From positions 62,001 to 126,000 of the forward strand of contig MU058896.1 of assembly GCA_013265495.1 (NCBI GenBank): a stretch of 64,000 nt of DNA, given 5' to 3'. The stretch's first letter is position 1. Each line of letters begins with the position of its first letter. The notes beneath the pieces are model-generated. The model was not told the DNA's origin. It made no database searches and worked only from the letters and a program-made list of their open reading frames with translations. Made by a program: the position numbers and the translations under genes. Shown in pieces: positions 11,466-59,768 of this stretch. This DNA is from Vicugna vicugna. Taxonomy: Eukaryota.

Positions 11466-11799
11466 TTTGCTTTTCCCCTCACCTGGCAGGCTGGTTGGGG
11501 TATTGTGACTTTGCGCTCCTCAGACTCCCTCCAGGGTGCGCTCTGCTGTGTGTCTAAGATCTCTGGGCTTCCCTGGAGGACAAGAAAAGATTTTGTTGCA
11601 CTGCCCGCCTGGGCTATCCCGTCTTATGCCGAGCCCTGGGCGTCCCAGTGGAGGCTGGAGACCCCCTTAGAGGCAGATTACACAGAGAAGTTCCGAGTCA
11701 GGCAACCCCGGGACGAACACGGGCTCAGGACCGCAGCAAGGGAGGCGTGGGTATTGAGTGACCGGGGGAGAAATTCTCATTGATTATGTCTGACAATCC

Positions 11800-13760
11800 C
11801 GCGTGGCAAAAGTTGCTTCATCACCCACCCGGCGACTTCAGGGCTGGAGACCGGTTGGCACCGCTGGGTGACCTGCTCGCTGGGGGCGCACTCAGCCCTC
11901 ACCCCCGGGAGGGGCCGCCGGGCTGGGGACAATGAGGGTGCAGGGGTTCCTGTCCCGGGAGTACAGAACTCTCCCTCCCGGCCTCGGTTTCCCCAAGCTC
12001 GGGGACGCAGGCCGGGCCGCGGCTGGGCGGGGGAGCGGCTCCTTTAAGAGGCCCTCCCGCTTCGTCCGCCGCGCCGCGGCCACCGCCCCCCGGCCCTCCC
12101 CTTCCTGCGGCGCCGGGTGCGGGCCGGGCGCGAGTGCGGCGAGAGCGGGCGGGCCAAGCGCAGCGCTGGGAGGCGGCGGCGGCCGGTCGCGGGCGCGGGC
12201 GCGGGAGCCCGAGGAGAGCAGCGCGCGGGCAGCGGCCATGGGCTAGTGGGCCCGGCAGAGCCGAGGCAGCGCTCGCCCCGCGCGCGCCGGGAGCCCCGCA
12301 CACAATAGCGGCGCGCGCAGCCCCGCGCCCTTCCCCCGCCCTCGCGCGCGCCCGCCCCGCGCCCCGCCTCGCGCCCGGGGAGCCTGGCCGCAGCCTCACC
12401 TGCCGCCCGGGAGGGGGCGGACATTGTTCGCACGCCGCCGCCGCGCCGGGCCCCGCGCGCACCCGGGCGGCGCAGGTGAGGCCGGCCGCGCCATGGTGGA
12501 CCCGGTGGGCTTCGCCGAGGCGTGGAAGGCGCAGTTCCCGGACTCGGAGCCGCCGCGCATGGAGCTGCGCTCGGTGGGCGACATCGAGCAGGAGCTAGAG
12601 CGTTGCAAGGCCTCCATCCGGCGCCTGGAGCAGGAGGTGAACCAGGAGCGCTTCCGCATGATCTACCTGCAGACGCTGCTGGCCAAGGAGAAGAAGAGCT
12701 ACGACCGGCAGCGCTGGGGCTTCCGGCGCGCCGCTCAGCCCCCCGACGGCGCCCCAGAGCCCCGCGCTCCGCGCCCCCAGCCCGCGCCCGCCGACGGCGC
12801 CGACCCTCCGCCCGCCGACGAGTCCGAGTCCCGGCCAGATGGAGAGGGTTCCCCGGGTAAAGCCAGGCCCGCGGCCGCTCGCAGGCCCGGGACCGCTGCT
12901 CCCGCGGACCGCGACGACCGGGGGCCCCCCACCAGCGTGGCGGCCCTGCGCTCCAACTTCGAGAGGATCCGCAAGGGCCCGGGCCAGCCAGCGGCGGCGG
13001 ACGCCGAGAAGCCCTTCTATGTGAACGTCGAGTTCCACCACGAGCGCGGCCTGGTGAAGGTCAACGACAAAGACGTCTCGGACCGCATCAGCTCCCTGGG
13101 CACCCAGGCCATGCAGATGGAGCGCAAGAGGTCCCAGCAGGGCGCCGGGCCCGGCCCGGGGGATGCGCCCAGGCCCCCCTACCGCGGGCGCGCCTCCGAG
13201 AGCAGCTGCGGCCTCGACGGCGACTATGAGGACGCCGAGCTGAACCCGCGCTTCCTGAAGGACAACCTGATCAACGCCGACGGCGGCGGCAGGCCTCCCT
13301 GGCCGCCCCTGGAGTACCAGCCCTACCAGAGCATCTACGTCGGGGGCATGATGGTGGAAGGGGAGGGCAAGGGCCCACTCCAGCGCAGCCAGAGCACTTC
13401 GGAGCAGGAGAAGCGCCTTACCTGGCCCCGCAGGTCCTACTCCCCTCGGAGCTTTGAGGACAGCGGAGGCGGCTACACGCCAGACTGCAGCTCCAACGAG
13501 AACCTCACCTCCAGCGAGGAGGACTTCTCCTCGGGCCAGTCCAGCCGCGTGTCCCCGAGCCCCACCACCTACCGCATATTCCGAGACAAGAGCCGCTCGC
13601 CCTCGCAGAACTCCCAGCAGTCCTTTGACAGCAGCAGCCCCCCGACGCCGCAGTGCCAGAAGCGGCACCGGCAGGGCCAGGTGGTCGTGTCCGAGGCCAC
13701 CATCGTGGGCGTCCGCAAGACGGGGCAGATCTGGCCCAACGATGGGGACAGTTTGTCGAG
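11800..13760. promoter_or_regulatory. BCR: CpG island over the BCR promoter, 5' leader and exon 1
   Basis: Very high GC and CpG density. GC box GGGCGG at 12025-12030 and TATA-like 'cctttaagagg' at 12041-12051. Leader blocks 'gagccccgcacacaatagcggcgcgcgcagcc' and 'gcctcacctgcc' match the recalled human BCR leader. TSS probably near 12070 (inferred). Confidence 0.9.
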
Positions 13761-13798
13761 CAGGGTGCCTCAGGATGGCACCTTCCATGGAGACGCAG
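12493..13798 (+). CDS. BCR: BCR exon 1 coding part (435 codons + 1 nt): coiled-coil oligomerisation domain, Grb2-binding YVNV tyrosine, Ser-rich region
   Basis: gcgccATGg Kozak context. MVDPVGFAEAWKAQFPDSEPPRMELRS... is the BCR N terminus. The PFYVNVEF Tyr codon at 13018-13020 is residue 176 here (human Y177). Phase 1 donor GCA G|gtgggt at 13799. Confidence 0.98.
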
Positions 13799-16138
13799 GT
13801 GGGTACCTCCACCCCCTTGGTAGGCACACCTGCCCCTGGCTGGAAACCACTGAGCAGGAGGGACTACAGGGAGGAATAAGTGGACACTTTGGGGAGTGAT
13901 TTTCAGATACTGTTGTGAACTGATTCATGCTGCCCCTGTGCCTGAACAAACTCCATCCTGCTTTCCTCCTGAATGCAAATTCCCAGTGCTTGGAATCAGA
14001 TGGGTTGGGAGGGGTGATGTGTGGGGATGGTAAGCAGCTCATTTCTTTGGTTCCAGAGCCATGTGCTTCTTGTGAGAGTCCTCTCTGTGGGTCAGGACCA
14101 GGATGCCCTGGGCAGTCGTCATCTTGCCCACTGATACTTCCACCCCGGGCAGTTGGGATGGTATAAAGAAGGGGTCAGCTCTGCCACCTAGGTGGATGTT
14201 TTCAGCTGGGATTGATCTGTGTCTTGGGCATTCCCCATCACTTGACCTAGAAGAGTTATGTGACACTTTTGGTGAATCCAAGATGTGCCAGCTGCTCCCA
14301 GGCCTTAAGAGTGTCAGGTTCACTGGTGAGCCAGCAGCCCCAGTGCAAGTCAGAGCAGGTGAAAATGCGAATTAGAAGGAAGATAGGTGACAGGCAGGTC
14401 TGACTCAGTGGGCCACAAAAGATCGCCGGGGTTGAAGATTTTATCTGGGGCCAGAGCGGAGCCACACCCGTTCTGATCTGCCTGGCACTGGTGGGAGACG
14501 TCACCCATCATTACTCACCTCTGTGCCTCTTACCCCACCTCCATTTTCTGATCCTTCGGCACACTCTTCCTCCTGTCTCCCCAAGGTTGCCTGCCCACTG
14601 GTGCTTATTTGGGGCTCCTAATCTGTGGTCTGACTCCCGGCCCTCAGATTAAACCTATGGAATTTTATTGTGTATGTAACTTCTGTGTACAAACGCCTTG
14701 AGATGTTGGGCTGATGGGACCGGGTGTTGCGATCCAGGCACAGTTTGTGATGTTGGGCTGATCCGGTTTTCTGCTCCATTGATTTTTCTTTTTCTGCTGA
14801 TGGATTTGTATGTGCCTCCTCCATCAAGAATCCTCTTGAAGCAAGTGAGGCTATTTTTGGCTCTGTCCAGCGGTCTCTTTGCAATCAGCGCTCTGTCCTG
14901 TTTGTTTTAGGCCCATCCAGTGGCCGGCCCTCCATCTGCAACTGGGTGGCTGTGTTGGTGTTGCTGCGACCTGCGGCCTGGCGCAGCCTCATCCCCTCCG
15001 TCTCTCAGAGCGGGTGGAAGGCTGTAATGTTTAGAAGCCTGCTTTGTAGGCCCATCAGCTCCTCCGGGGTCTGGAGGATTGCCCTGTGGTCACTTGGCAC
15101 CAGCCTCGGCTGGCCAGCTGTCAGCTGAGCGAGCCAGCTTGAACTGGCCCTCAGCGCTGTGGTGCAGGAGGATGTAATTAATAAAGGAGAAAATAAGAGG
15201 TTTTCATGGAGACCTGTCTTCTGAAACGATGTTCTCTAGCTGGTGGAGGATTCTGAGTTTCCAGAAGGTGGGCCCCTGCCGGCTGGGGTGTGTATCAGCA
15301 GGCCCTTCCCTGAGCTCACAGCTCCTGCAGACCGGAGACCCCGGCTCTGTGGGTGACACAGAGCAGGTTCTCGGCTGAGAAGTTAACTTTCCAACTTGGA
15401 CCCCACTCTCAGCACTTTCTGGATCCTTCCCTGAACTGTCCTTCCAGGTTCCACGTTGTCTCTCCTGTTACGTTTTAAAACTCCTGCTGGGTTTAGCTCT
15501 GGGAGCCTTTCAGCTCAGTTGCCAGCACCCTCCTCTGAGGGTTGTGCTGGAGAGGATGGGGGGATCCCGCTCTGGCCCGGCCATCTGTCTCTGTCCTGGC
15601 TGTTTACCCACGTTCTCGGGCCTGGGGACTGCTCGGCAGGGCTGCACCTCTGAAAAGGGCCAGTGATGGAAATCACAGTGTGGGAGGGAGTGGAAGTCAC
15701 TCTAAGACTCTGTAGCAGCAGCAGCTGGTCCGTGGCCTGGACCTAACAGCTTCAGGGTCCCTTTGGATGAGCGGGCTCTGGTGTTTCTGAGTTGAGAGAA
15801 GAAGCTGAAATGACCACCTGCCACTGTGTGCCAGGGCCCCTCGGGTCAGTCCAGGGGGCCTTCCAGCTCCGCACACCCAGGTCCCCCCGCTGTGAACCTT
15901 GCTGCGGGCAGGCTCTTCCCTTGTGCCCCGTGGGCTGCAGAGGAGAGAGTCTGGTCCCTGTCATCTGGGAGCTTACAAATTACAGGGAGACAGGAATGCA
16001 CACGTCACTTATGTGTTCAGAGGGAGCGCGATCAGGGAAGCTTCTGGAAGCAGCTGCACTGGAGAGGGACCTTCTGGTGAGGGGAGCCGTCTGCTTGGAG
16101 GAGCAGTGGGAGCAAAGGCTTGTCACTCTAGACTGTAC

Positions 16139-54261: not shown

Positions 54262-54428
54262 ATGCATCATTCGGAACGCCGCCGGGGTACGGCTGTGCCG
54301 CGGACCTGGCTGAGGAGCAGCGCCGGCACCAGGACGGGCTGCCCTACATCGACGACTCGCCCTCCTCCTCGCCCCACCTGGGCAGCAAGGGCAGGGGCAG
54401 CCGGGACACACCAGAGGCCACCAAAGCG
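54262..54428 (+). CDS. BCR: BCR exon 2 (D-ASFGTPPGYGCAADLAEEQRRHQDGLPYIDDSPSSSPHLGSKGRGSRDTPEATKA)
   Basis: Acceptor acacag| at 54260-54261, donor GCG|gtgagt at 54429. 167 nt, phase 1 to phase 0. Confidence 0.97.
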
Positions 54429-59134: not shown

Positions 59135-59239
59135 ACTGAGCTGGACCTGGAAAAGGGCTTGGAGATGAGGAAATGGGTCCTGTCCGGAATCCTGGCTAGT
59201 GAGGAGACGTACCTGAGCCACCTGGAGGCACTGCTGCTG
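59135..59239 (+). CDS. BCR: BCR exon 3 (TELDLEKGLEMRKWVLSGILASEETYLSHLEALLL), start of the DH domain
   Basis: Acceptor ctcctgcag| at 59133-59134, donor |gtgagg at 59240. 105 nt, phase 0-0. Confidence 0.98.
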
Positions 59240-59582: not shown

Positions 59583-59768
59583 CCCATGAAGCCTTTGAAG
59601 GCCGCCGCCACCACCTCTCAGCCGGTGCTGACGAGCCAGCAGATCGAGACCATCTTCTTCAAAGTGCCCGAGCTCTACGAGGTCCACAAGGACTTCTATG
59701 ATGGGCTCCTCCCCCGCGTGCAGCAGTGGGGCCGCCAGCAGTGCGTGGGTGACCTCTTCCAGAAGCTG
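59583..59768 (+). CDS. BCR: BCR exon 4 ([62 protein letters not shown]), DH domain
   Basis: Acceptor ctcttccag| at 59581-59582, donor |gtgagt at 59769. 186 nt, phase 0-0. Confidence 0.98.

What the first reader, a model, noticed from the sequence alone, without database searches (positions are those of the whole stretch)
12473..12495. Near-consensus 5' splice site 17 nt upstream of the BCR start codon
Seen: CAG|GTGAGG at 12473-12481, with GT at 12476-12477 and ATG at 12493. It looks like a better U1 match than the real exon 1 donor (CAG|GTGGGT). From memory the human mRNA has CAG|GTAAGG at the same position, which would mean the donor is conserved despite a change at +3. Established: exon 1 encodes the coiled coil, the Grb2-binding Tyr and the Ser-rich region, and the paralogue ABR lacks them. 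Promoter-proximal U1 sites also suppress premature polyadenylation. Inference: (a) use of this donor removes the whole 1.3 kb coding part of exon 1 and joins a non-coding leader to exon 2, giving an ABR-like DH-PH-C2-GAP isoform or an unproductive transcript; or (b) it is a splicing-silent U1 landing site protecting a very long first intron. In human, (a) would also predict a leader-to-ABL1 junction in Ph+ cells.
Basis: partly seen in the sequence, partly recalled or inferred. Interest (0 to 1): 0.7.

Follow-up and report, generated by a model that had tools for sequence, protein, structure and literature searches.

The report
Conserved donor-like motif in BCR leader
A sequence that looks like a strong splice donor sits 17 bases before the BCR start codon and is kept in every mammal examined, but its exact mirror copy further upstream is kept just as strictly, so it is more likely half of a paired regulatory element than a working splice site; no RNA evidence could be obtained.

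Summary
CAG|GTGAGG lies at 12473-12481, the BCR ATG at 12493, the exon 1 donor CAG|GTGGGT at 13796-13804, and exon 2 starts at 54262.

The 8-mer is no commoner in the window than chance predicts (10 found, 9.0 expected). It is, however, invariant in 8 placental sequences. It is kept with changed flanks and spacing in two more divergent mammals, and it is absent from the bird, lizard and eel leaders.

New here: its exact reverse complement, CCTCACCTG, lies at 12394-12402. Apart from the block around the ATG, these two motifs are the only invariant runs of 7 nt or more in the placental leader alignment. Neither reader hypothesis explains the upstream copy.

- **Isoform:** splicing 12475 to 54262 keeps the frame, but the first AUG after the junction is out of frame.
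- **U1 shield:** exon 1 has no poly(A) hexamer; the first lies nearer the real donor.
- **RNA stem:** there is no covariation, and flank complementarity is at chance level.

My best reading (about 0.4) is a conserved inverted pair of CACCTG/CAGGTG E2-box-type DNA sites whose likeness to a donor is a by-product.

Whether the site is ever spliced stays untested.

The parts
12473..12481 (+). CAG|GTGAGG: the donor-like motif, which also contains the E2-box CAGGTG; GT at 12476-12477
   Evidence: CAGGTGA is invariant in 8 placental sequences, and the full CAGGTGAG is found in each of them. U1 duplex energy is -11.6 kcal/mol.
12394..12403 (+). CCTCACCTGC: the exact reverse complement of the donor-like motif, containing the E2-box CACCTG. 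On the minus strand it reads CAG|GTGAGG.
   Evidence: CTCACCTGC is invariant in all 9 mammalian sequences that reach this far.
12404..12430 (+). Conserved block next to the upstream copy, holding a GC-box-like GGGGGCGG (12413-12420) and CATTGTTCG (12422-12430)
   Evidence: Alignments A1 and A2; coordinates.
12493..13798 (+). Coding part of BCR exon 1 (435 codons plus 1 nt)
   Evidence: Pfam Bcr-Abl_Oligo, E 2e-40; homologues at 87-94% identity.
13796..13804 (+). Exon 1 donor implied by protein homology, CAG|GTGGGT
   Evidence: U1 duplex -12.8 kcal/mol.
54262..54428 (+). BCR exon 2 (167 nt). Its first three bases are an out-of-frame ATG.
59135..59239 (+). BCR exon 3. It holds the first in-frame ATG after exon 1 (MRKWVLSGIL, the start of the DH domain), overlapped by the stop codon of the exon-2 ATG frame (ATGA).
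12238..12246 (+). Mini upstream ORF, ATGGGCTAG, in the leader
   Evidence: The same MG-stop ORF is present in L001 and L002.

Best explanation
The motif is one half of a conserved inverted pair of identical 8-9 nt elements in the transcribed CpG-island leader of BCR: CTCACCTG(C) at 12395-12403 and CAGGTGAG at 12473-12480. The most economical reading is one sequence-specific reader that recognises the same DNA word in either orientation. That would make the pair promoter-proximal E2-boxes (CACCTG/CAGGTG), the class bound by ZEB1/2, SNAI1/2 and E-proteins. The likeness to a 5' splice site would then be a by-product, because CAGGTGAG is at once an E2-box and the donor consensus. As a donor the site is probably silent or rarely used.

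Shown: the two copies, their invariance, and their restriction to mammals.
For: - Apart from the block around the ATG, the only invariant runs of 7 nt or more in the aligned leader of 8 placentals are CTCACCTGC and CAGGTGA(G). They are reverse complements of each other.
- Spacing between the copies varies from 70 to 156 nt, and the sequence between them varies freely.
- In L011 and L010 the flanks and the distance to the ATG differ (GT at -10 and -36), yet CAGGTGA is kept. L010 changes donor position +5 (G to A) but not the E-box core.
- The upstream copy adjoins other conserved words typical of DNA sites, a GC-box-like GGGGGCGG and CATTGTT.
- No base in either 8-mer shows even a wobble-compatible change in 9 sequences. 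That fits a sequence-specific reader better than a pairing constraint.
- Precedent: the E-cadherin promoter carries CAGGTG at -74 and CACCTG at -24 as paired ZEB1 sites (PMC3244408).
Against: - No binding data of any kind, and no motif library could be consulted. The factor names rest on general knowledge.
- Both copies are transcribed if the start site lies upstream of 12394, so an RNA-level reading is not excluded. RNAalifold's consensus does pair the two copies.
- The invariant word is 8 nt, longer than the 6-nt E-box core.
- A U1 site whose complement is constrained to mask it would also predict two invariant copies.
- The block from the motif to the ATG is conserved as a whole in placentals, so part of the constraint may concern translation start.
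Confidence: 0.4

Rival explanations
1. Splicing-silent U1 snRNP binding site. U1 binds the cap-proximal motif and promotes transcription or elongation, or suppresses premature cleavage, while the downstream donor is the one joined to exon 2.
For: The motif forms eight contiguous pairs with the U1 5' end (-11.6 kcal/mol). It is conserved across mammals with changed flanks. BCR's first real donor lies unusually far from the cap: at least 1.4 kb if the transcription start lies upstream of 12394, and about 1.7 kb with the start I assumed at 12070. Established knowledge, cited in PMC9074902: U1 at 5'SS motifs blocks downstream cryptic cleavage. When two donors are both occupied, the one nearer the acceptor is used (my recollection of Eperon et al. 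1993).
Against: There is no AATAAA or ATTAAA in exon 1, and the first hexamers (14648, 15180) are nearer the real donor. The antisense strand of the same island carries equally strong sites, so there is no sense bias. This idea does not explain the invariant upstream mirror copy. The motif is predicted to be fully base-paired in this species. An unspliced 5'SS motif in a mature mRNA can favour nuclear retention, although that was shown for motifs near the 3' end (PMC9074902).
Confidence: 0.2
2. A real but minor alternative donor. Splicing 12475 to 54262 removes the whole exon 1 coding part. The product would be an unproductive, NMD-prone RNA, or, by leaky scanning or reinitiation, a protein starting at the DH domain.
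For: The site is a strong consensus, is cap-proximal and is conserved. The deletion of 1323 nt keeps the frame. The junction AUG has a weak context (C at -3, C at +4), and its 66-codon ORF ends in AUGA at the in-frame Met of MRKWVLSGIL.
Against: No transcript evidence was found by any route available here. The joined mRNA has no in-frame AUG in the leader. The motif is predicted to be paired in this species. To my recollection no such isoform is among the reviewed human BCR isoforms; this is unverified. The mirror copy is unexplained unless it acts as a mask.
Confidence: 0.15
3. The two copies pair in the mRNA and close a stem just upstream of the AUG. The stem would control scanning and translation, with the conserved uORF of other mammals lying in its loop, and might also hide the donor-like motif from U1.
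For: In the window the arms extend to a hairpin of about 28 bp. The MFE is -78.9 kcal/mol for 121 nt, and P(pair) is about 1 for six of the eight core pairs (0.77 and 0.30 for the other two). RNAalifold's consensus for 9 mammals contains the helix UCACCUGC/GCAGGUGA. A conserved 18-codon uORF lies between the arms in most placentals.
Against: None of the 8 core pairs shows covariation, and the covariation term is unfavourable (+2.31). The partition function pairs the arms in only 4 of 9 species. Complementarity of the flanks is not above shuffled controls: z is -1.5 in the window, -2.7 in pangolin and about 0 in the other six. The fold z-score is only -2.2 in a GC-rich background. Rfam gave no match.
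Confidence: 0.15
4. No function of its own. The motif rides along in a generally conserved block next to the start codon, and the mirror copy is a coincidence.
For: The 8-mer is at chance frequency in the window. Half of the ungapped leader columns are invariant among placentals (62 of 125). GC-rich leaders are full of inverted repeats (45 pairs in 511 nt).
Against: These are the two longest invariant runs in the leader and are exact reverse complements. By my own estimate, not simulated, the chance of that is about 4^-7 to 4^-8. The motif survives in L010 and L011 where the flanking block has changed.
Confidence: 0.1

Closest known systems
Paired E2-boxes of the E-cadherin (CDH1) promoter bound by ZEB1 (PMC3244408)
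   Same: Two copies of CAGGTG/CACCTG in opposite orientation, tens of bases apart, next to the transcription start in a promoter-proximal region.
   Different: In BCR the order is CACCTG then CAGGTG, and both copies lie inside the presumed 5' UTR. The invariant word is 8-9 nt, not 6, and the spacing varies from 70 to 156 nt. No binding has been shown.
U1 telescripting and promoter-proximal U1 sites (Kaida 2010, Berg 2012, Almada 2013, as cited in PMC9074902)
   Same: A sense-strand sequence complementary to U1, downstream of a CpG-island start site and upstream of a very long intron.
   Different: No poly(A) hexamer lies in the stretch it would shield. The antisense strand is not depleted of such sites. 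The real donor is closer to the intron.
Alternative 5' splice sites inside long first exons
   Same: A consensus GT donor upstream of the annotated donor, sharing the same acceptor; the resulting deletion keeps the frame.
   Different: No junction evidence. The product lacks an in-frame start codon until exon 3.
5' splice sites masked by RNA stems (MAPT exon 10, SMN2 exon 7 TSL2; from general knowledge)
   Same: The donor-like motif is predicted to lie in a stem with a conserved complementary arm.
   Different: Here the complementary arm is 70-156 nt away, the pairing is predicted in only 4 of 9 species, and there is no covariation.

Membership tests
Functional alternative U2-type 5' splice site | Match to the donor consensus and to the U1 5' end | tested here: met
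   CAG|GTGAGG scores 11.0 bits on an approximate matrix and forms 8 contiguous pairs with U1 (-11.6 kcal/mol).
Functional alternative U2-type 5' splice site | Spliced junction seen in RNA | not testable with these tools
The exon-2 peptide search returned genomic ORFs only. The junction pattern gave only chance microbial hits.
Functional alternative U2-type 5' splice site | The spliced product has a usable reading frame | tested here: inconclusive
   The frame is kept (1323 nt removed), but the first AUG after the junction is out of frame and the next in-frame AUG is in exon 3.
Splicing-silent U1 (telescripting) site | Cryptic poly(A) signals within about 1 kb downstream that need suppression | tested here: not met
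   No AATAAA or ATTAAA lies between 12476 and 13798; the first is at 14648.
Splicing-silent U1 (telescripting) site | Sense-strand enrichment of U1 sites over the antisense strand near the promoter | tested here: not met
   Antisense sites of equal or better score have their GT at 12399, 11482 and 13421.
Splicing-silent U1 (telescripting) site | U1 snRNP occupancy | not testable with these tools
   No CLIP data are available.
Paired E2-box promoter element (ZEB/SNAI/E-protein class) | CACCTG/CAGGTG core present in two copies near the promoter | tested here: met
   Copies at 12394-12403 and 12473-12481.
Paired E2-box promoter element (ZEB/SNAI/E-protein class) | Conservation of both cores across species | tested here: met
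   Both copies are invariant in the placental sequences. The upstream copy is also invariant in L010, and the downstream core is kept in L010 and L011.
Paired E2-box promoter element (ZEB/SNAI/E-protein class) | Factor binding and an effect on transcription | not testable with these tools
   No ChIP data or motif library are available. The older BCR promoter papers are not held.
Structured 5' UTR regulatory stem | Covariation supporting the helix | tested here: inconclusive
   The 8 core pairs never vary, so they say nothing either way. The covariation term is +2.31, and the flanks are not above shuffles.
Structured 5' UTR regulatory stem | The helix is thermodynamically favoured in each species | tested here: inconclusive
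   P(pair) is about 1 in 4 species and about 0 in 5.

The most novel reading that the evidence does not exclude
The mirror pair is a switch. The upstream copy pairs with and hides a strong cap-proximal donor. Transcripts that start downstream of 12403, or in which the stem is opened, expose the donor to U1. They then splice the leader straight to exon 2, discarding the coiled-coil and Ser-rich exon. BCR output, and in Ph+ cells BCR-ABL1 output, would then be set by start-site choice or helicase activity.
Probability: 0.06. Interest if true: 0.65.

Novelty: new member of a known kind. Interest (0 to 1): 0.3.

Why it matters
The BCR promoter and leader drive BCR-ABL1 in Philadelphia-positive leukaemia, and oncogene dosage affects disease progression (background in PMC4504180). 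A strictly conserved paired element in the last 100-180 bases before the start codon is a concrete, mutable candidate regulator of that dosage. If the motif were used as a donor, it would yield transcripts without the oligomerisation domain, which I recall (not checked here) is needed for transformation. As it stands, this is a conserved motif pair of untested function in a well-known gene. It is useful to BCR specialists but is not a surprise.

Tried and rejected
2. Two run searches show that RNA runs hold 0.44-0.69 of the words of exon 1 and the leader. That shows the region is expressed but gives no junction information.
3. The exon-2 peptide search returned 8 short proteins, all intron-exon-intron genomic ORFs and none transcript-derived.
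4. The junction pattern CGCAG+ATGSNTCNTTCGGAAC matches both the normal and the proposed junction. In metagenome contigs it gave 12 chance microbial hits and no BCR transcript of either kind, so the result is uninformative.
5. Literature: the primer-like string around the ATG gave no paper. BCR 5' UTR phrases gave no paper. Zhu 1990 and Shah 1991 on the BCR promoter are not held. The searches for BCR isoforms found nothing about a leader donor.
6. Rfam on 11900-13900 gave no match. The bacterial promoter scan is irrelevant here.
7. The idea of a long conserved hairpin is rejected as a conserved feature, because flank complementarity is at shuffle level in most species.
8. A CTCACCTG/CAGGTGAG pair 1.8 kb upstream of the lizard ATG shows no likeness to the mammalian leader and I take it to be unrelated.
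9. I could not tell whether L010 and L011 are marsupial or monotreme. The tree places them inside the mammal clade, unresolved.

Full report
**What is there.** The window carries the 5' part of a non-human mammalian BCR gene.
- The ORF from 12493 encodes the BCR N-terminus (Pfam Bcr-Abl_Oligo, E 2e-40). Its best database relatives are 94% and 93% identical. A tree groups the window with L001 and goat.
- Exon 1 ends at 13798, with donor CAG|GTGGGT. Exon 2 is 54262-54428, exon 3 is 59135-59239 and exon 4 is 59583-59768.
All quoted coordinates are right.

**Is it more than chance?**
- As a bare word, no. CAGGTRAG occurs 10 times in the window against 9.03 expected. Equally good donor-like sites lie on the antisense strand of the same CpG island, with GT at 12399, 11482 and 13421.
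- By U1 5'-end duplex energy the real donor is slightly better (-12.8 against -11.6 kcal/mol). 'Better than the real donor' therefore holds only by the matrix.

**Conservation.** I fetched orthologous loci through exon 1 protein homologues.
- CAGGTGAG stands at the same place in all eight placental sequences. These are the window, an unnamed close relative, pangolin, desman, slow loris, Scotinomys and two rodent-like assemblies.
- Two more divergent mammalian assemblies keep it with different flanks and spacing. L011 has CCAGGTGAGG with GT at -10. L010 has CAGGTGAAG with GT at -36.
- The bird, monitor lizard and eel leaders have nothing like it near the ATG.
The remembered human CAGGTAAGG could not be verified.

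**The new fact.** The exact reverse complement, CCTCACCTG, lies at 12394-12402.
- In the alignment of eight placental leaders, half of the ungapped columns vary (62 of 125 are invariant). Apart from the block around the ATG, the only invariant runs of 7 nt or more are CTCACCTGC (12395-12403) and CAGGTGA(G) (12473-12480).
- The distance between the copies ranges from 70 nt in the window to 129-156 nt in the other species.
- Any explanation of the donor-like motif has to account for its mirror copy.

**Testing an RNA stem.**
- In the window the two copies are the core of a long hairpin. The MFE is -78.9 kcal/mol for 121 nt with a z-score of -2.2. The donor bases -1 to +6 are predicted to be fully paired.
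- RNAalifold's consensus for nine mammals contains the helix.
- However, the eight core pairs never vary, so they carry no covariation, and the covariation term is unfavourable (+2.31).
- The partition function pairs the arms in only 4 of 9 species.
- With the core held fixed, flank complementarity is not above shuffled controls. The z-score is -1.5 in the window, -2.7 in pangolin and about 0 in the other six.
- What is conserved is the word, not an extended stem. Rfam has no match.

- Joining 12475 to 54262 removes 1323 nt and keeps the frame. The leader has no in-frame AUG, only a two-codon uORF at 12238.
- The first AUG after the junction is the first three bases of exon 2. It is out of frame and in a weak context.
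- It opens a 66-codon ORF whose stop overlaps (AUGA) the first in-frame AUG, the Met of MRKWVLSGIL at the start of the DH domain in exon 3.
- The product would be an NMD-eligible RNA, or a truncated protein made only by leaky scanning or reinitiation.

**Testing option (b).**
- Exon 1 has no AATAAA or ATTAAA. The first hexamers in the intron (14648, 15180, 17284) are closer to the real donor.
- The antisense strand is not depleted of U1-like sites.
- The specific shield idea therefore has little to act on, although a general U1 role in transcription is not excluded.

**RNA evidence.** None could be obtained.
I did not resend a trimmed stretch.
- The exon-2 peptide search returned only genomic ORFs.
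- A junction pattern that would match both the normal and the proposed splice found only chance microbial hits.
- Nothing on a BCR leader donor turned up in the paper library, and the two classical BCR promoter papers are not held.

**Reading.** Two invariant copies of one 8-9 nt word in opposite orientation have variable spacing and no wobble changes. The upstream copy lies beside GC-box-like and CATTGTT words. These features are most simply explained by one sequence-specific reader of double-stranded DNA.
- CACCTG/CAGGTG is the E2-box, and an inverted pair of them forms the ZEB1 sites of the E-cadherin promoter (PMC3244408).
- CAGGTGAG is at once an E2-box and the donor consensus, so the splice-site look may be incidental. 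I put this reading at about 0.4.
- A silent U1 site (0.2), a rare donor (0.15), an RNA stem (0.15) and no function (0.1) remain open, and they are not mutually exclusive.
- One sharp discriminator: if human really has CAGGTAAGG, the E-box core is broken there while the donor is kept.

**Verdict.** This is a real, conserved motif, but the finding as written sees only half of it. Function is untested. Interest is modest.

Noticed in passing
window 12430/12431; L001, L002, L004, L007, L008 at about -105 from the ATG: The window lacks about 100 nt that all the other placental leaders have after CATTGTTCG. In five of them this stretch holds an 18-codon uORF (MGAARRPGPGLAR.PRRR type) with a strong start context, ending at a conserved GCTGAG. 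In slow loris and Scotinomys the same uATG runs on past the main ATG out of frame. Either the window's species has really lost it or the assembly collapsed in GC-rich sequence.
   Followed up: partly
window 12238-12246: A two-codon uORF, ATGGGCTAG, in a strong context. L001 and L002 have the same MG-stop ORF; in desman it runs to 24 codons.
   Followed up: partly
window 12404-12430: A block next to the upstream mirror copy holds GGGGGCGG and CATTGTTCG. In L010 it is conserved except for one base of the window itself (12421, A where the other species have G).
   Followed up: no
L012 2800-3000 (bird, Limosa): The bird leader is unlike the mammalian one. The CpG island lies 200-1000 nt upstream of the ATG. 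The last 60 nt before the ATG are pyrimidine-rich with ...ctctccag, which looks like an acceptor, so the start codon may be preceded by an intron in birds. The flank contains N runs, which I left untouched.
   Followed up: no
L013 2179-2230 (monitor lizard): CTCACCTG and CAGGTGAG lie 36 nt apart, 1.8 kb upstream of the BCR ATG, in sequence that shows no likeness to the mammalian leader. This is probably unrelated.
   Followed up: partly
window 54262-54428: Exon 2 is 167 nt and encodes ...GSRDTPEATKA. That is five residues shorter than the ...GSRDALVSGALESTKA version seen in P0122.
   Followed up: no
window 59165-59168 (exon 3): The +1 frame that opens at the first base of exon 2 stays open for 66 codons. 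It stops in ATGA, overlapping the Met at the start of the DH domain.
   Followed up: partly
L004, L007, L009 at about +1280 and L011 at +1390 from the ATG: In these sequences the CAGGTGAG at these positions appears to be the exon 1 donor itself, the same 8-mer as the leader motif. The window has CAGGTGGG at its donor.
   Followed up: no
window 11478-11485 (minus strand): A third CAGGTGAG lies 1 kb upstream of the ATG on the minus strand. It is not at a conserved position in the other species.
   Followed up: partly
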